The notes beneath the pieces are model-generated. The model was given only the letters and a program-made list of their open reading frames with translations. It ran no database searches and was not told the DNA's origin. Of a stretch of 64,000 bases of DNA, positions 58 through 10,900 are shown in pieces. The stretch is from Oculina patagonica (lineage: Eukaryota), in NCBI RefSeq assembly GCF_052425735.1, contig NC_135760.1:14322001-14386000 (forward strand). The letters run 5' to 3'. Each line of letters starts with the position of its first letter. Position 1 is the first letter of the stretch. The position numbers and the translations under genes are program-made.

Positions 58-3000
58 CCTGATTTATCAGGAGCTGACTCTGTAACATAAACATTAAAAC
101 GCTTCTTTTGTTCCGTGGCCCTTTTAAGAATTTCCAACACAACTCTGGATCGCGAGTGGGTAAGAATTGTCTGAAAAAACACATATGTAGAGTTGGACAG
201 TTGTTTACTACAATGAACAGAATGAACAGAGAATTTGTCAATATTTCCATTGAAATGTTGTGGTTGCTTTTTACATGCAGTTTTCGAGCCTTATAAGCCT
301 TATTGTTGTTTATTTTTACTTGTCTATGTTTTTCAAGCCACTTGGATTATCAACATATCAACCTAGTAAATGGCCCAGCTCACCACGAGTCTCTCGTAGC
401 TCAATTGGTTAGAGCACCCAACTGGGAGGCTATGGGTTCGATTCCCATGAAGGACTCAGATTTTTTTCTTTGTCCCACGCTCCTGTCATTGTTGAACAAT
501 TCACTTCATTATTATCACTGAACTTAAAATTTACCATCTTTCTTATTTCAGCTATAACTTAACCACCACACAATGTAGCCCAGTGCAACTCTATTTTACC
601 ACTGAAAATAAAAATAAAACACAGGACAAAATAAATTTGTTATGGTCACAGAGTAATATCAAACTTACCGCTCCATCCTTAATAAATGAGTCACAAAGTT
701 TGGCAATTTTCTGTCTGGCTGAGGCAGCTCTCTTAAGATACAACTGGCCTAATCAAAACAAAATAGTTCCAAATAAATGAACTTATCATTTGATGTATTT
801 TTTAGTTCCTTTTTATTGGCCAACTGCTTACAAGTAATAGTCTGCTCATGCAAATTGCATCTGACGGTGATTTTGCTGCAAATAATATTCTGCTTGTTTG
901 AGGAATAAAAAGTATGTTGCGTCTACTTCTAAGAAAAATGGCAACTTGCTTTCCAGAGTTGTCTGAGAGTGATGTTTTATTTCTACTAGACCAAAGACAA
1001 TATAAGTGATGAAATAATAAAACAATTCAACTTGGTTATCGCAAAATATCATGATTTGTCAGTGTTTCGCACATCAATTATTATTATTTGCCTCAGCCTT
1101 TGGCTTGAACAAACAATTGATCAGCTCGCCACTGACAAATCCAGATATTTTGCTCAACCTTATTTATAATTTGTTAAATGGTTGAAAATTTTGTTGGTTG
1201 ATTGAAAATTTTGCTTAACCTCACTTGATAACTCTTAAATGGTTAAAAAATATTGAAAGAGTCAGAAAACATGAGAAAAAGTTTTATTGGTTGCTTAGTA
1301 CCTCTCTCGACCAAAACTCTCTTGCATTCTTGAAAGTCCTAGGAAAGAAATAGTGACTGTCAGAACAATGTATATGACAATAAAAGTTCTTAAAAACAAT
1401 ATTTCCAGAAGGTATGGTTAATTTCATGTCACATGACCATAACAACAAATTGAAGGATACTTATTAGGAGTCTCCAACCAGTAAAAATTAAAAATATTTT
1501 TTGCACAAGGTGATGCTGAAAGATGGTGTTCTACTGTTACACAAAAGAAGGGGGATTCGATAATTATAAAGATGAAAGCATGTTTAAAAGGATATAAACT
1601 GGAAGGATTACAAACATATACAAATGTAACAATTAAAAGACATACCGGGTTGTCCAGAGCAGCAAGAGTTATAAATCTAAGAAACAGTTCACAGCCAGAT
1701 GATATTGAAGTAACTGAGCCTTCTGTTTTGGTTAGCACTTCAATGACTTCTTTCAGATTCTCCCTCAGTTCAGACAATGTTTCAGCTACCAAAAAAAAAA
1801 AATAATTGGAAGTCTGTCTTGATATGATTTTCTTTCAATATATTGATAATTTGTTAAGTTTCTGATGTACTTTGTAGGCAATTGTTTTTTGTCGCAGACT
1901 GTCAGGGTGGATAATTCTGTCCACTGATCAAATAAATCATTATCCAACCAAGTGGATAATACAGTTTGTTTTGTTCACACTTATTCGTCCAATGGATAGT
2001 GGTTTATTATCTGGTGGTTGATAACCACTTTTTTAAAACAACCATGTCCCGGCATTTAAACCCATGATTACATAACTTGCCACCCGACTTTATTCTTATC
2101 TAATATGACCATTAACGCCATTACCAGAAATAAATGGGTGACCCTATTCGGCGGAATGGCGGAATGACGGAACGGCACAGCGGAATGGCGGAATGGCGGA
2201 ATATCCTAAAACGCGGAATGACGGAATATCCTAAAACGCGGAATGACGGAATATTCTAAAACGCGGAATTGTGAAACATTAAAAAAAGAAGCAACAAAAA
2301 CAAACAAACAAAAGGAAAATTATAACTGCTAACTTTCTCAGACAGCGATTAAGGCTAAGAATGTCGCTAAGAATGATTCAGGTACTTTAACTTGTGGATA
2401 TTCGTCGCTGTGACAGAAAAGCCAAATTGTTTACAGCGGCTGCTAGCAGTAGAAAACCAGTAAACAGTAAGTATACCCCATAAACGAAGGGTTCTTTATA
2501 TATCTTCTTAATCCTTCGAAGGATACTCGAGTGATCGAGGGAGGATTTCGTTATTTTACAGAGTTCTCGACCCGCTCGAGACAATGAAACGTATAAAGCC
2601 GAAGTACGCTAACGAAGCCGTTAGAAAGAAAACGAAAGGGCCTGAAATTAACTGAGTTTGTACTGAAAAAATTAAAAAAAGGAAACCCACAACAAGGGTT
2701 TTCCAGATGGTCACCCATCCAAGTACTAACCCCGCCCAACAGGGCTTAACTTTGGCGATCAGACGAGAACCAATGCTTTCCTTGTGGTATCAGTCCCAGA
2801 GGAAGCAAAGACTTACAAGAGTCATGCAAATTAAGAACAGAAATACCTGGTTATAACGGATCTTTTGAATGATGCTTTAACTGGACTTACACAGTTATGA
2901 GCTGATTTACGCGCTCTTTCTGATATCACATGGAAAGCAACGGTTCACATCCGATCGCCAAAGTTAAGCCCTGTTGGGCGGGGTTAGTACTTGGATGGGT

Positions 3001-3960
3001 GACCATCTGGAAAACCCTTGTTGTGGGTTTCTTTTTTTTAATTTCTCAGTACAAACTCAGTTAATTTCAGGCCCTTTCGTTTTCTTTCTAACGGCTTCGT
3101 TAGCGTACTTCGGCTTTATACGTTTCATTGTCTCGAGCGGGTCGAGAACTCTGTAAAATAACGAATTCCTCCCTCGATCACTCGAGTATCCTTCGAAGGA
3201 TTAAGAAGATATAAAAAGGACCCTTCGTTTATGGGGTATACTTACTGTTTACTGGTTTTCTACTGCTAGCAGCCGCTGTAAACAATTTGGCTTTTCTGTC
3301 ACAGTGACGAATATCCACAAGTTAAAGTACCTGAATCATTCTTAGCGACATTCTTAGCCTTAAATCGCTGTCTGAGAAAGTCAGCAGTTATAATTTTCCT
3401 TTTGTTTGTTTGTTTTTGTTGCTGTTGTTGCTTCTTTTTTTAATGTTTAACAATTCCGCGTTTTAGAATATTCCGTCATTCCGCGTTTTAGGATATTCCG
3501 TCATTCCGCGTTTTAGGATATTCCGCCATTCCGCCTTGCCGTTCCATCATTCCGCCATTCCGCCGCATAGGGTCACCCAAATAAATAAAGACAGAAAAAA
3601 GAAACATGGAAATGTTGAGCCATTAAATACACTGGCCTTTCTTCAACTAATTAAATGTGTGCTTGTTATAGTATCTTTAAAGTGCGATCTGCTGGTGATA
3701 AATATCGTTTCTTTCAAAGCAGAAATAAATATACGAAAGCTTACATGCAGTAGGTACTGTAGCTTACCCGAGTTTTGATTCATGAATTCTAGCAGCGTTT
3801 GAATAGCGGCAACAGCCGTCGACATGCCAGGATCGTCCACCATACACTTTTGAAAGAACGTTACAGCCTCTGGGAATAGAAACCGTAGAAAAATTGATTA
3901 ACATTAACGCGTTTAGCTTTAAAAAAGTGAAAATTTTAGCCAGCTACCTTCGTTGTCCAT
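58..3960 (-). CDS. EIF2B1: Translation initiation factor eIF2B subunit alpha (5' part; continues beyond left edge). Exons 3948-3960, 3768-3869, 1646-1785, 1302-1338, 669-748, 58-170
   Basis: Spliced translation [33 protein letters not shown]...[15 protein letters not shown]...[13 protein letters not shown]...[25 protein letters not shown]...[12 protein letters not shown]; all junctions are GT-AG and phase-consistent. Confidence 0.93.
392..545 (+). mobile_element. tRNA-derived SINE-like repeat in EIF2B1 intron
   Basis: A box TAGCTCAATTGGTTAGAGC and B box GGTTCGATTCC with no full cloverleaf; the tail GGACTCAGA..TTTGTCCCACGCTC recurs at ~21985-22060. Confidence 0.6.
2681..2792 (-). pseudogene. 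5S rRNA-derived sequence, left arm of foldback element
   Basis: Minus strand GATACCAC..GGTTCTCGTCTGATCGCCAAAGTTAAGC..GGTTAGTACTTGGATGGGTGACC follows invertebrate 5S rRNA, including box A and box C; followed by a T-run. Confidence 0.75.
2921..3039 (+). pseudogene. 5S rRNA-derived sequence, right arm of foldback element
   Basis: CCGATCGCCAAAGTTAAGCCCTGTTGGGCGGGGTTAGTACTTGGATGGGTGACC followed by a T8 Pol III terminator-like run at 3032-3039. Confidence 0.75.
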
Positions 3961-4996
3961 GTTGTCTCGTTCGCTTTTGGGTAGAGTTCGGTACACAATA
4001 TGCCCCCATACATAACATAGCTACCCGCTTTTGGAGGTATGCCGCTGACAATCTCGCTGGCTCAAGAATTTCCTTGCAACGGGACGGGAGACCCTCGGGA
4101 TCAGGTGCATTTCTTTTGCTTGTGCGCAAAAACTCCAATAGATCTTTTTCGCTTGGGCGTTTTGTTGCCCCATTACAGACCATGTGATGTTACTCTTGAG
4201 AGTTCTTGCTTTCAAATTTTCAAATAGTCGCGTGTATGTGAATGAATAAATTTTATGTGGATAAAAGAAAAATTCTCTAGAGAACATCACGTACGTCTGT
4301 AAATGGGAAAACAAACCGCCCAAGCGAAAAAGGTCTATCGCCGGACAAGGAAATGTTGGACCTCTTTACACGGAATCAGGTATAACAGGTCATTTACGCG
4401 TCACAGGAAACCCTGACAATGAACAAACTTTACATTTTCTATCCAGCGTAGGGAGTTTCACAAGTCGGATGATCAAAATCGGATCAGGTCGGCGCGGCGC
4501 GGCCTGGTGCGAAAATGAACAGTCTAGCTCCCATTTTGCTTTGTCACTTGCTAGCTTGCTTACTAGCTCTCCTTGCTTGTTACCGTCCAGACGTCCGTCC
4601 GTCTGTTTTCTATTTTATCCCGTTTCATTCTTTCATTCCTTCCTTCCTAATTCCTTTCTTCTTTCACGAGTCCTTCCATGTTCCCTTTATTCTCCAATGA
4701 CTCCAATCCTTTCTCAACTGTAATTATTTCCTTCTTTTCTGGATCAAATGATCTAACAGATCAAAGAACATAATTATTATCATTCCTTGTCATGACACAT
4801 CACTAAGGTAATCTTTGTAACTGATATTCTTTTCAAGGTCAGTCAAAGCGCATTTGCATATGTCATACATATTGAGCAGTTGAGTTGTTTACACGAACTC
4901 AAATTGTCACACAAAACTGCTTTCCAACGGCTGCACAAGATCTTACAATCAAGACAATCAAGGTTTTCTGTTGTCGGTCCAAAGGTGTGATCAGAG

Positions 4997-7900: not shown

Positions 7901-10900
7901 TCAATGGGGTGTTGGCTCTTACAGTTGACGGTTAAAATTTTGGCTTTTTTCGGTTAATCGTTATGGAAATAACGATTAACATAAGTTAAAAGTTAATTTT
8001 CATTGTTTTAAAAGGTTAAAAATTTATTTCCATTATTGAAAAACATATTGTAGGTCTCAGGGCCATTCTGGGACGATGTAGTGAACTAGTTTGGTTTATT
8101 TATAATTACTGACCGATTTTTTACGGTTTACATATTTTACGGCTAACGATTAAAATTTTCCAATTTTTACGCCTAACGACTACATTTTTGACCGTTTTCG
8201 GCTAACGGTTAACCCCATTGAGACCCTCTGCTAACGGACCTTCATTACACTCTTTGTGGGCTTGAGTCCACAAAAAGAGCTCAAAGAATCGACCTGACCT
8301 GACGAAATTTCTATTGACATTTTGACAAGAAGTTGGATAAAGTACTTACAGATTAGGGTACTTGTCCGCCATAAAACTGTAACAAATTGGAAGAATATGT
8401 CCTTATTATCGAACATGAAACGAGTTCTTTGGCTTGAAATCATTACGTGTAAATTGTCCTTTGTTTTAACCAGTAGTAGCTCTATAGGCAACCCACCTCA
8501 ATGTTTAATTTTGTCGGATCGAAAGACTAACACCGCTGAAACCGACAGCAGTTTATTTACTTCTTCAAACAAGTAAGTTATGTATTTTTCATTTGCAAGG
8601 TTAATTCCCGAATCTCCTCGCTGGTTGATTGCTAAAGATCGTCTTGACGAGGCTCACGAACTGCTCATGAAATACGCCAAGAGAAACCGTGTTGCTGTCG
8701 AATCCACTCAACTCAAACACGTGATACAGGAGTTCAAAAAGGAAGAGGTTCGAAATCGCAACGAGAACAGGAAAACCTACGGAATTCTGGACATGTTTAG
8801 AACTCCAAAGCTCAGGAAAAGAACTATCATCTGTGGATTTAACTGGTGAGTGGAAATTTTGGAAACAAAAATGATTATTTGGCTGGGTGGCGCTGGCCTC
8901 TGGGAGGCGCGGTGGCCTAGTGGTTATATGTGGTCGTTAATGCTGGTACGTTGCTCACTGGAATGCCCAATTGTGCTCAAAAATTGCCAAAAATGCAAGA
9001 AGTTGCTACTTTAAAAATTCCAAAAAGTTGCTACCTAAATTTCTTAATATTTTTATATAATCTTTAATTAAAATCTTTATTTTTCGTTCTTCACAATAAT
9101 TGCTCAAATCGGTCAAGAAAAATTGCTTGAAACTTAGCTTTAAAGAGGCGCTCGCAAATATGGGCGGAATAAGCCTAACTCAACTAAAAAACGTTGTCAG
9201 GTGGCAGGTTATGTTATCATGAGGTTGACAAACATTAAAGAAATTCGCATAAATTGAAGTTTTCTTTTATATGATCGTTGACTTTTTCGTGCTTTATAGG
9301 TGCTCTAAACCTATATTTTGCTCAAAAATTGCTCAGAAAGACAAAACTCGCTCGAGGTTGTTCGTATCGCAGAACGTTGCTCCAAACGCCAAAAGTTGCT
9401 GAAAAGTTGTCAAGCACATTCGCAACAGGCCTGCAACGGACTCCGGAACAAGCGGTCCGGGTTGAAGCCCTGGCAGGGGCAATTGCCTTGTTTTCCTGGG
9501 TAAGACACTTAATTTTCACACTGCCTATTCCCAAAACGGGTAGTGCTCGTCTGAATTGACAACCTTTTCACTTATCGATTCTATTGTTTGCAGGTTCGTG
9601 AACGCTTTAGTTTACTTTGGAATTAATTTGAACGTTGGAAATCTGGCAGGAGACATGTACCTGAATTTCTTCATCCTATGTATTGTAGAAATTCCAGGAG
9701 CTTTACTTCTCTGGTATTTCCTGTCTAGGTATTCCTTAAATTATCACCTGTTATTCAAGTATTAGTTTGGTAGGAGTGCTATTTTCCACACTTAAATTTC
9801 AAGAAGCTGCGAAAGGTTTTCCGTGGCCGCATTGCCACAAACTATGGTATCTTCAGTTTAAAGCATTGGAACCCGTTCTCAAAGCTAGCCGCAAATAAAA
9901 TAGAACCGTCGTCAAATAAATTAAATAAAATTCACACTTGATAAATTGTTTTGCCTGAGGCAAACAGAAGCTTGGCCAGTTAGCGCCGTTTATCAGGAAT
10001 AAGTACCTTGGGGGTAATAGCCAACTTAAGCAACGCCCCAAAAATGGATTCTGGTATCTTTACGGGTGTTCCTACGAAAACCATTGTCATTTCTATTTGA
10101 AAAACCCCCGGGACCGCTTCAAGTCAGTAAATACGAGAATTCATTAAACTATTGCGCTCTTTTTTAGATTTGGCCGTCGTATTCCGTACGCTACATTCAT
10201 GATCACTGGAGGTGTGGCGGAAATGTTGGTACTTGCTGTCCCTGCTGATAAAGGTCAGTTAGCTGAAAATACTTATTCTTTTCAGATAACACGCAGACGT
10301 TGAACCTAACCATCCCTTAATTTACCTTATTAAAGACCCTCTGTCTACCAGGATGCAACGCGCGCGCGTTTATTTACGTTTTGGTTTAGTCAGAGTTATC
10401 AGTAATGGTCTCCGAGGACTTCCGAGGACGCCATACAGTGGCCATACTCACTTTACATCGTTCAAAGGCTCAACCGCTTGGCTGTACACAATCTTTTAGA
10501 ATTTGAACCAACGACCAAACATCTTTTTTCAAGTAAAGATCGACAACACCACTATCACAAACGCTTACAGTGAAAGAATGGAGGTTTCATAACGTACGAA
10601 ACCTCGGTGAGGTTTCATAACGTACGAAACCTCGGTGCACTCGCGCGGTGCATTATGGTCGACAGAGAGTCTTCAAAATGCTCCGAGCAGACAAGTGAAA
10701 AGAATATTAAAAGAGGTCACTTCATCCTGGAAATGTCGTCTTGATTAAGAACCGAATTATAATGGTAAATCTTTTAATTCGTTTTATTATATGGCTACAA
10801 TAGTACGCGCGCTCTGATTGGCTGCTGAGTGGGCATTATTTTCTTGTAATGACCGGGATTATGAAAAATTTTCTCGGCTCGCGGTTTTTTTTTTTGGAAA

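What the first reader, a model, noticed from the sequence alone, without database searches (positions are those of the whole stretch)
2136..3578. Foldback transposon whose long inverted arms each carry an outward-facing 5S rRNA-derived Pol III cassette
Seen: a 1443-bp element with an exact 8-bp TSD, GGGTGACCCT termini and ~655-bp near-identical arms. At the inner end of each arm is a 5S-like sequence with recognisable box A (AAGTTAAGC) and box C (TTGGATGGGTGACC), followed by a T-run. The terminal TIR motif GGGTGACC also occurs within the 5S box C. Established: 5S capture is known in SINE3 and plant Cassandra TRIMs; I do not know of it in a TIR foldback element. Inference: the element may be transcribed by Pol III, recruit TFIIIA, disperse 5S-like copies, and form a ~650-bp dsRNA hairpin in EIF2B1 pre-mRNA (ADAR or Dicer substrate).
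Basis: partly seen in the sequence, partly recalled or inferred. Interest (0 to 1): 0.72.

Follow-up and report, generated by a model that had tools for sequence, protein, structure and literature searches.

The report
Coral Mutator foldback transposon carrying 5S units
This is a real, recently inserted, non-coding "foldback" jumping gene of the Mutator type in a stony-coral genome; each of its two arms carries a copied 5S ribosomal RNA gene that keeps its RNA polymerase III promoter, which the papers I could search report only for retroelements, and whether the units are transcribed is untested.

Summary
Window 2136-3578 is a 1443-bp palindromic element with an exact 8-bp target duplication (AAATAAAT), GGGTGACCC termini, about 660-bp arms and two outward-facing 5S-like units (Rfam 74 and 67 bits), each followed by a T-run.

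It belongs to a dispersed family. The terminal 23-mer occurs about 349 times, and more than 20 copies have different perfect 8-bp duplications. Contigs from two related coral taxa show the precise empty site, so it is a true insertion and not a misassembly. It lies in intron 1 of EIF2B1.

I found the likely autonomous partner: a 9.8-kb element with the same termini and subterminal repeats, its own 8-bp duplication, and an 812-aa transposase whose homologues carry the Pfam MULE domain. A second such element exists in another assembly. Neither carries 5S.

The units derive from the host's major 5S gene plus its terminator. They are degraded as rRNA. Their internal promoter shows fewer lineage-shared substitutions than the arms (p=0.003), while private mutations are equal. 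This suggests selection on propagating copies. Pol III transcription, TFIIIA binding and dsRNA effects remain untested.

Earlier notes of this scan described the same family on other DNA of this genome. A 2024 review lists 5S capture only in SINEs and LTR/TRIM elements.

The parts
2128..2135 (.). Left copy of the 8-bp target-site duplication AAATAAAT
   Evidence: Contigs of X5 and X8 carry a single copy of these 8 bp at the empty site (joint 2127->3579, 8 letters fit either side).
2136..2290 (+). Left terminal inverted repeat (GGGTGACCCTATTCGG...) plus subterminal arrays of 8-bp (GCGGAATG) and 25-bp repeats. These are probable transposase-binding sites.
   Evidence: families D1, D2. This is the only part shared with the autonomous element. 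Conservation across copies is 0.83-0.98.
2291..2665 (.). Left mid-arm, of unknown origin and not present in the autonomous element
   Evidence: Inverted repeats I1 and I7; no match to the autonomous element; the least conserved part of the arm.
2666..2680 (-). T-run terminator of 5S unit A (T7 AA T6 read on the minus strand)
   Evidence: Homologous to the TCC + T-run just downstream of the native 5S gene.
2681..2797 (-). 5S rRNA-derived unit A, pointing outward toward the left end
   Evidence: RF00001 74.1 bits, model positions 1-120. Positions 45-97 are almost identical to the native gene.
2798..2912 (.). Central spacer between the two 5S 5' ends. It contains a conserved ATGCAAAT octamer / AT-rich box at 2824-2831, which is -27 to -34 of unit A.
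   Evidence: octamer intact in 16 of 19 oriented copies. No homology to the native 5S upstream region.
2913..3031 (+). 5S rRNA-derived unit B, pointing outward toward the right end. Helix I is degraded.
   Evidence: RF00001 66.9 bits. The B-type 5' part differs from the A type at 10 of 41 consensus positions. The predicted fold is no better than shuffled sequence, z = -0.31.
3032..3039 (+). T8 terminator of unit B
3046..3424 (.). Right mid-arm, the inverted copy of the left mid-arm
   Evidence: I1, I7.
3425..3578 (-). Right subterminal repeat arrays and terminal inverted repeat (...AGGGTCACCC)
   Evidence: (D3, D4).
3579..3586 (.). Right copy of the target-site duplication AAATAAAT
1645..1769 (-). 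EIF2B1 exon (eIF2B-alpha residues about 39-82), downstream of the element in gene sense
   Evidence: PDB eIF2B-alpha hits at E=2.7e-5. A spliced contig in X13 joins 1337 to 1645, with GT..AG on the minus strand.
3643..3843 (-). Open frame holding the probable first coding exon of EIF2B1 (N-terminus). This places the element in intron 1.
   Evidence: ORF list. The assignment is an inference: the next exon starts at residue about 39, and the sequence resembles the eIF2B-alpha N-terminus from my own knowledge. There was no Pfam hit.

Best explanation
Shown. The element is a non-autonomous, foldback-type member of a Mutator-like (MULE) cut-and-paste transposon family of a stony coral, probably Oculina patagonica.
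- It shares only its roughly 150-bp ends (terminal inverted repeat plus arrays of 8- and 25-bp subterminal repeats) with a 9.8-kb autonomous element that encodes a MULE-type DDE transposase.
- It makes 8-bp target duplications.
- It entered intron 1 of EIF2B1 after this lineage split from two related taxa, or it is still polymorphic.
- Between the ends it carries foreign DNA. This includes a head-to-head pair of units copied from the host's major 5S rRNA gene, each with the gene's internal control region (box A, intermediate element, box C) and its T-run terminator.

Inferred.
- The transposase binds the subterminal repeats and moves the element in trans.
- The 5S gene was picked up at the DNA level, as Pack-MULEs pick up host fragments, and was then mirrored.
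- The units no longer make usable ribosomal 5S RNA.
- Their internal promoter is kept by selection among propagating copies. Most likely (about 35-45%) this is because it recruits TFIIIA/TFIIIC/Pol III, giving short 5S-like transcripts and/or open, boundary-like chromatin that favours further transposition.
- Within EIF2B1 pre-mRNA the element can fold into a hairpin of about 650 bp.
For: Structure and significance of the 5S units.

A real family:
- About 349 termini against 0 in the control.
- 151 matches on all large contigs.
- At least 23 copies with different perfect 8-bp TSDs.
- 97 TE-type box C signatures against 0 in the control.

A real insertion:
- X5 and X8 contigs join 2127 to 3579, skipping 1451 bp, with 8 shared letters.
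- X1 has both filled-site junctions.

Autonomous partner:
- C12:2438405-2448249 has the same TIR and 25-bp repeats and the TSD AAAAATTG.
- Its 812-aa ORF has homologues to E=0. It matches P0013, which carries PF10551, at E=5e-76.
- 10 of 22 homologues match Pfam MULE, best E=9e-8.
- Conserved D334, D403, C424, H427, N536 and E539 fit the MULE DDE and CxxH pattern (the pattern is from my own knowledge).
- A second collinear element with the same ends lies in another assembly, L073:5130-13402.
- 8-10 bp TSDs and long TIRs are MULE features (PMC5225508).

Origin of the 5S units:
- Positions 45-97 are nearly identical to the 117-bit native gene. Homology runs about 9 bp into the native terminator and not upstream.

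Constraint on the promoter:
- Lineage-shared substitutions are 9/106 in the internal promoter against 149/750 in the mid-arms (Fisher p=0.003).
- Singletons are 13/106 against 83/750 (p=0.74).
- In a divergent copy, L047, one 5S unit is identical to the A consensus over 130 bp while its arm differs by 18%.

Hairpin.
Against: - The partner's own ORF misses the Pfam MULE threshold (E=0.23). Its classification rests on homologues.
- No experiment or read data show that this transposase moves these elements.
- No evidence of Pol III transcripts. RNA-run contigs over the element are low depth and do not match 5S unit boundaries.
- No upstream promoter homology was captured, and unit B lacks an AT-rich box near -30.
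- The constraint test uses only 20 copies, one alignment and several regions. Recombination between copies could mimic it.
Confidence: 0.8

Rival explanations
1. The 5S units are inert passengers. A MULE picked up a 5S gene by chance, as Pack-MULEs pick up gene fragments. The family amplified recently, and the apparent conservation of the promoter is sampling noise, hitch-hiking or copy-to-copy recombination.
For: - The units are degraded as rRNA: 67-74 bits against 117 for the native gene, and unit B does not fold better than shuffles.
- No upstream promoter was captured.
- No Pol III-like transcripts were seen.
- Copies are young, 1-4% from the consensus, so overall conservation proves little.
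- Termini (about 349) outnumber TE-type box C signatures (97), although that signature misses the divergent subfamily.
Against: - Shared substitutions are depleted specifically in the internal promoter, as in the TIRs, while private ones are not.
- The pair of units is kept in nearly all sampled copies and in all subfamilies, including one that is about 27% divergent.
- Terminators are retained on both sides.
Confidence: 0.45
2. The element belongs to another 8-bp-TSD superfamily (hAT, Merlin or P), and the co-occurrence with a MULE transposase is coincidental nesting.
For: An 8-bp TSD is also typical of hAT. The ORF itself does not reach the Pfam MULE cut-off.
Against: - Two independent long elements in two assemblies have the same TIR and subterminal arrays at both ends, enclose the same transposase, and are collinear with each other.
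- The C12 copy has a perfect 8-bp TSD around the whole 9.8 kb.
- No hAT, Merlin or P domain was found in that ORF.
Confidence: 0.04
3. The units are working variant 5S rRNA genes that a transposon has dispersed, so the host uses them.
For: Full-length Rfam matches above threshold, with promoter and terminator present.
Against: - Helix I and the 3' region are altered. Scores are about 45 bits below the native arrays.
- The predicted folds lack the native three-way junction.
- The native gene is kept in large homogeneous arrays.
Confidence: 0.03
4. It is an assembly artefact (a false palindrome).
For: Palindromes are a known long-read artefact.
Against: - Dozens of copies have distinct TSDs.
- Short-read contigs of an organism-A run (possibly the sample the window was assembled from, so not independent support) cover both junctions.
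- Contigs of other taxa carry the family and the exact empty site.
Confidence: 0.01

Closest known systems
Tm1, the Mutator/Foldback family of root-knot nematodes (PMC3169594)
   Same: Foldback-like composite inverted arms with internal short repeats. A MULE-type transposase in the autonomous members. Many non-autonomous members, some carrying a captured small-RNA-related motif (a histone hairpin).
   Different: Tm1 makes 9-bp TSDs and has a Phantom/FLYWCH-type transposase. Its cargo is a histone 3' hairpin, not a Pol III gene. The family here has 8-bp TSDs and a mirrored pair of complete 5S units.
Pack-MULEs (plant MULEs carrying host gene fragments; e.g. PMC5861414)
   Same: MULE ends flanking DNA captured from the host. 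The element is non-autonomous and amplified.
   Different: Pack-MULEs carry fragments of protein-coding genes. Here the cargo is a whole Pol III-transcribed RNA gene with its internal promoter and terminator, duplicated in inverted orientation, in an animal.
5S-derived retroelements: SINE3/AmnSINE1 and other 5S SINEs, and the Cassandra (plants) and Ajax (ribbon worms) TRIMs (PMC10946416 Table 2; PMC10886601)
   Same: A mobile element that has taken over the 5S internal Pol III promoter and keeps it conserved. Cassandra likewise carries one unit in each terminal repeat.
   Different: All of those are retrotransposons, which need an RNA intermediate, so a promoter is directly useful to them. This is a cut-and-paste DNA transposon with TIRs, 8-bp TSDs and a DDE transposase partner, for which a Pol III promoter has no obvious role.
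Drosophila Foldback/Galileo-type elements
   Same: Very long inverted arms with tandem subrepeats near the ends, a short centre, and recombination-prone palindromes.
   Different: Galileo uses a P-type transposase. None of these elements is reported to carry 5S units.

Membership tests
Mutator-like elements (MULE superfamily) | An autonomous member encodes a MULE/MuDR DDE transposase | tested here: met
   The partner ORF (L052:6982-9420) matches PF10551 only at E=0.23. It is, however, homologous at E=5e-76 to P0013, which carries PF10551. 10 of 22 aligned homologues hit PF10551, best E=9e-8, and single members hit Transposase_mut and SWIM. Conserved D334/D403/E539 and C424xxH427 are present. 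Membership is met by transitive homology, not by the ORF's own score.
Mutator-like elements (MULE superfamily) | Target-site duplication of 8-10 bp | tested here: met
   Perfect 8-bp TSDs in the window copy, in at least 22 other copies and in the 9.8-kb element. The range for MULEs is taken from PMC5225508.
Mutator-like elements (MULE superfamily) | Non-autonomous and autonomous members share terminal inverted repeats | tested here: met
   The terminal 150 bp or so match at 86-96% between the window element and the C12 element. Nothing else is shared. The same ends occur in L073.
Mutator-like elements (MULE superfamily) | Mobilised by that transposase | not testable with these tools
   This needs a transposition assay.
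Foldback-type elements (a structural class) | Long inverted arms that make up most of the element, with tandem subrepeats | tested here: met
   Arms of about 660 bp out of 1443 bp; 8- and 25-bp repeat arrays; predicted stem with MFE -1197.6 kcal/mol.
5S rRNA (Rfam RF00001) | Covariance-model score above the gathering threshold, full length | tested here: met
   74.1 and 66.9 bits against a threshold of 38; model positions 1-120.
5S rRNA (Rfam RF00001) | Intact helix I and three-way junction, as in the host's working genes | tested here: not met
   Native genes score 117 bits. The 5' and 3' ends are replaced or degraded. The MFE folds differ from the native fold, and unit B has z = -0.31. I therefore file the units as 5S-derived, not as 5S rRNA genes.
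5S rRNA (Rfam RF00001) | Transcribed by Pol III from the internal control region | not testable with these tools
   Boxes A and C and the terminator are present. The only RNA contigs available are uninformative.
5S-derived SINEs / Cassandra-Ajax TRIMs | Retrotransposon hallmarks: a LINE-like or poly(A) tail, or LTRs with PBS/PPT, and variable or 4-6-bp TSDs | tested here: not met
   The element has terminal inverted repeats, uniform 8-bp TSDs, precise empty sites and a DDE transposase partner.
Pack-MULE | MULE TIRs enclosing DNA captured from host genes | tested here: met
   The 5S gene plus its terminator derive from the host's major 5S type, lie between MULE ends, and are absent from the autonomous elements.
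Pack-MULE | The cargo is fragments of protein-coding genes | tested here: not met
   The cargo is a Pol III RNA gene. No coding similarity was sought in the mid-arm.
hAT superfamily | A hAT transposase partner | tested here: not met
   The elements that share these termini encode a MULE-type protein, and no hAT domain was found. The 8-bp TSD alone would also fit hAT.

The most novel reading that the evidence does not exclude
A cut-and-paste DNA transposon has co-opted the 5S internal promoter as a working module. TFIIIA/TFIIIC/Pol III loading on the two outward-facing units would keep the element in open, boundary-like chromatin, or supply a small RNA, and so raise its chance of being mobilised. 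That would be why propagating lineages preserve the promoter as strictly as the transposase-binding ends. It would be the first Pol III-dependent DNA transposon. It would also be a source of about 100 dispersed TFIIIC/Pol III sites, plus long intronic hairpins, in a coral genome.
Probability: 0.3. Interest if true: 0.8.

Novelty: new variant of a known kind. Interest (0 to 1): 0.6.

Why it matters
5S promoter capture is a textbook route for retroelements, which need transcription to copy themselves. A DNA transposon does not need it. A conserved, mirrored pair of 5S units in a MULE therefore either shows that Pack-MULE-like capture extends to Pol III genes in animals, or points to a new use of Pol III factors by transposons (chromatin access, insulation, small RNAs).

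Practical consequences:
- The family scatters about 100 5S-like sites that can be mistaken for 5S rDNA loci in FISH or annotation.
- It places hairpin-forming sequences of about 650 bp in introns of housekeeping genes such as EIF2B1.
- An apparently intact transposase and presence/absence differences between close taxa make it a candidate active element and a population marker in corals.

Tried and rejected
- Direct Pfam scan of the partner ORF gave no hit at the default threshold and only E=0.23 for MULE. I resolved this through its homologues.
- A profile search of solved structures with the transposase alignment gave nothing.
- An exact-pattern scan of JGI metagenome contigs with a TE-specific box C signature gave 0 hits. 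It says nothing about distribution.
- My first conservation profile suggested a poorly conserved spacer. That was an artefact of aligning A-side and B-side halves together. In properly oriented copies the spacer is well conserved. I therefore replaced the simple profile with the shared-versus-singleton substitution test.
- I tested whether the arms derive from the native 5S spacer. They do not: homology stops about 9 bp past the gene.
- I tested whether the element is a deletion derivative of the autonomous element. It is not: only the ends are shared.
- I tried to fetch the right halves of the larger palindromes and the second transposase locus (C13:21493763-21496197).
- Literature searches for a 5S-carrying DNA transposon found none. 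The library lacks most subscription journals and Repbase, so this absence is weak.
- A first-pass lookup of earlier findings near the window found nothing.
Full report
**1. The observation**

Reading window 1900-3800 shows the element exactly as described.
- GGGTGACCCT begins at 2136 and AGGGTCACCC ends at 3578.
- The element is flanked on both sides by AAATAAAT (2128-2135 and 3579-3586).
- The repeat finder gives inverted blocks of 339 nt at 97%, 156 nt at 90% and 125 nt at 94%. Near each end it finds tandem arrays of an 8-bp unit (GCGGAATG) and a 25-bp unit.
- Aligned to its own reverse complement, the whole element is 90.4% identical.
- Rfam finds two full-length 5S matches: 2681-2797 on the minus strand (74.1 bits) and 2913-3031 on the plus strand (66.9 bits). 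The gathering score is 38.
- The units are head to head, point outward, and are each followed at once by a T-run.

**2. It is a transposon family, not a one-off or an artefact**

- In the window's own assembly (529 Mb, 14 large contigs) the element has 151 scored matches on all large contigs. Many are full length at 80-95% identity.
- The terminal 23-mer occurs 170 + 179 times with up to 2 mismatches, against 0 for the reversed control.
- Flanks of 29 sampled copies show perfect 8-bp direct duplications of different sequence in at least 23 of them.
- Contigs of public runs laid on window 1300-4500 settle the locus:
  - The run labelled with the assembly's organism has both filled junctions (1300-2161 and 3445-4166).
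  - Runs of two other organism labels each have one contig that joins 2127 directly to 3579. It skips 1451 bp, which is the 1443-bp element plus one 8-bp copy, and 8 letters fit either side.
  - Their flanks differ from the window at a few sites per hundred bases or fewer.
- This is a precise empty site. The insertion is therefore younger than the split of these close taxa, or is polymorphic, or was precisely excised. MULEs with donor-site TSDs are known to excise precisely (PMC5225508).
- Contigs of those two runs also cover parts of the element (for example 2744-2922) with only a few differences, so the family appears to be present in those taxa too.
- The window copy is 3.8% from its subfamily consensus.

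**3. The autonomous partner is Mutator-like**

- Among the terminus hits, one inverted pair lies 9845 bp apart (C12:2438405-2448249).
- It has the same terminus, longer arrays of the same 25-bp repeats at both ends, and a perfect TSD, AAAAATTG.
- It contains an uninterrupted 812-codon frame (L052:6982-9420).
- That protein has no Pfam hit at default settings and only E=0.23 to PF10551 MULE.
- The word-based protein search finds 25 relatives. One is from Oculina patagonica, and P0013 (E=5e-76) and P0025 carry PF10551. Scanning the 22 aligned sequences one by one gives PF10551 in 10 of them (best E=9e-8), plus single hits to Transposase_mut and SWIM.
- Invariant or nearly invariant columns D334, D403, C424, H427, N536 and E539 fit the DDE triad and CxxH motif of MULE transposases. 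That pattern comes from my own knowledge.
- A 92%-identical protein (P0001) sits in a contig of a different public assembly. There the same terminus and repeat arrays again bracket it at L073:5130 and 13402. The two long elements are collinear at 80-87% identity.
- The own genome also has a second, broken copy of the gene on C13 and many more distant MULE genes.
- Neither long element contains a 5S match.
- The window element shares only its terminal 150 bp or so with them. It is therefore not a deletion derivative. It is a pair of MULE ends around foreign DNA.

**4. Where the 5S units come from and what state they are in**

- The genome's working 5S genes form arrays with a 2005-bp period on C1 and C1187 (117 bits). 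A second type with a 518-bp period lies on C10 (94 bits).
- The element's units align to the major type. Positions 45-97, which hold box A, the intermediate element and box C, differ at only about five positions, two of them in the 3' part of box C.
- Homology continues about 9 bp past the gene into the native TCC + T-run. It does not extend upstream.
- The 5' and 3' ends that form helix I are replaced or degraded, especially in unit B.
- Folded alone, the native sequence gives the expected fold (z = -2.4). Unit A folds differently (z = -1.6), and unit B folds no better than shuffles (z = -0.3).
- I conclude that the units are 5S-derived promoter-plus-terminator cassettes, not ribosomal 5S genes.
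- A TE-specific box C signature occurs 97 times in the genome, against 0 for the control.

**5. Internal anatomy of the family**

- Clustering of 48 arms shows that in the window's subfamily every element has one A-type and one B-type arm.
- The A and B mid-arms differ by 3% and their internal promoters by 0 of 53. The first 44 nt of the two 5S units differ at 10 of 41 positions, and the spacer is asymmetric.
- A second subfamily, about 14% diverged in the arms, has A-type 5' ends on both sides.
- A copy about 27% diverged (L047) again has one A and one B unit. Its A unit is identical to the A consensus over 130 bp, although its arm differs by 18%.
- So the head-to-head 5S pair is an old, stable core, and the mirror symmetry is imperfect at the centre.
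- In correctly oriented copies the spacer is well conserved. It holds an ATGCAAAT / AT-rich box 27-34 bp upstream of unit A, about where the native gene has TTTAAAT. Unit B has nothing similar.

**6. Is the promoter under constraint?**

Copies decay neutrally after insertion. Substitutions shared by several copies arose in propagating lineages. I used 20 full-length copies.

| Region | Shared-variant sites | Singleton sites |
|---|---|---|
| Two internal promoters | 9/106 | 13/106 |
| Mid-arms | 149/750 | 83/750 |
| Fisher p | 0.003 | 0.74 |

- Within the AB subfamily alone, shared-variant sites are 1/106 against 53/751 (p=0.0095).
- The terminal repeats show the same deficit of shared changes (p=0.0003).
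- This is the pattern expected if elements must keep the 5S promoter to spread, as they must keep their ends.
- The sample is small, several regions were compared, and recombination among copies could mimic the pattern. I treat it as suggestive.

**7. Context**

- On the minus strand, 54-182 matches eIF2B-alpha residues 124-161 (Pfam IF-2B E=1e-10; PDB E=7e-10). 1645-1769 matches residues 39-82.
- A contig of X13 splices 1337 to 1645 with GT..AG on the minus strand. This also shows that the run contains RNA.
- The N-terminal exon most likely lies in the open frame at 3643-3843 (inference). The element therefore sits in intron 1.
- The pre-mRNA-sense strand folds into an almost continuous stem of about 650 bp, with MFE -1197.6 kcal/mol.
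- X13 contigs touch parts of the element at low depth, with boundaries that do not follow the 5S units. They are compatible with intron or read-through RNA, or with other copies, and give no evidence for Pol III transcripts.

**8. Comparison with what is known**

- The 2024 review of rDNA-TE relations lists 5S-derived mobile elements only as SINEs and as the LTR/TRIM families Cassandra and Ajax (PMC10946416 Table 2).
- The Ajax paper does not mention DNA transposons. My other searches found none.
- The structurally closest described system is Tm1 of root-knot nematodes. It is a Mutator/Foldback family with transposase-encoding, MITE-like and histone-hairpin-bearing members (PMC3169594).
- Gene capture by MULE ends is the Pack-MULE phenomenon.
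- I therefore class this as a new variant of known kinds: a Mutator/Foldback non-autonomous element whose cargo is a mirrored Pol III gene.
- Earlier notes of this same scan describe the same family in other windows of this genome. One calls it Mutator-like and another describes a nested form. My results agree. They add the empty site at this locus, the partner in a second assembly, the A/B asymmetry and the substitution test.

**9. Limits**

- The organism name rests only on one contig length equal to that recorded for an Oculina patagonica protein.
- Copy counts are lower bounds.
- Mobilisation by the identified transposase, Pol III activity, factor binding and any effect on EIF2B1 are untested.
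- The shared GGGTGACC between the terminus and box C is unexplained.

Noticed in passing
L003:1078-3360, L006:1072-3408, L008:1041-3347, L010:1070-3409: In four copies the palindrome runs about 425 bp beyond the GGGTGACCC termini on both sides, and the immediate flanks are inverted, not direct. It ends at a second set of termini (GGAGTTTGATCGTAGCACGAGTCAA...) with their own, different 8-bp TSDs. This makes a 2.3-kb composite foldback element that moved as a unit. Arm-to-arm conversion may have erased the inner TSD.
   Followed up: partly
G000:C6:38483374-38490408: Three or more partial copies of the element (query positions about 411-1430) recur with a period of about 2522 bp. This is a short tandem array derived from the transposon, similar to what is described for Cassandra.
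   Followed up: no
window:2824-2831: An ATGCAAAT octamer inside an AT-rich box in the spacer, 27-34 bp upstream of 5S unit A. It is intact in 16 of 19 oriented copies and lies where the native 5S gene has a TTTAAAT box. It may be an upstream promoter element.
   Followed up: partly
window:2136-2143 and 2997-3004 (also 2707-2714 on the minus strand): The terminal 8-mer GGGTGACC of the transposon is identical to the core of 5S box C. The autonomous element has the same terminus but no 5S. Chance is roughly 0.003-0.01, and the meaning is unknown.
   Followed up: partly
window:34817-42558: A cluster of seven tRNA-Lys(CTT) genes in both orientations, five of them with the same Rfam score (65.1 bits).
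   Followed up: no
window:397-448: A partial tRNA-like match (34 bits, model positions 8-63) inside an EIF2B1 intron. It may be a tRNA-derived repeat.
   Followed up: no
window:4082-4400: Another high-copy repeat, with contig depth in the thousands in all four runs, just beyond the probable first exon of EIF2B1.
   Followed up: no
window:4997-8849 (+): Exon-like open frames of a sugar/MFS-type transporter gene on the plus strand (Sugar_tr E=1.3e-7 for 8580-8849). It is oriented divergently from EIF2B1.
   Followed up: no
G000:C10:9461610-9469043: A second 5S rDNA type (94-96 bits) in a 518-bp-period array. It is distinct from the major 2005-bp-period arrays on C1 and C1187 (117 bits). The transposon's units derive from the major type.
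   Followed up: partly
G000:C13:21493763-21496197 (-): A second copy of the family's transposase gene, 94-98% identical, interrupted by two stops or a frame break. A family terminus lies about 12 kb away, at C13:21508068.
   Followed up: no
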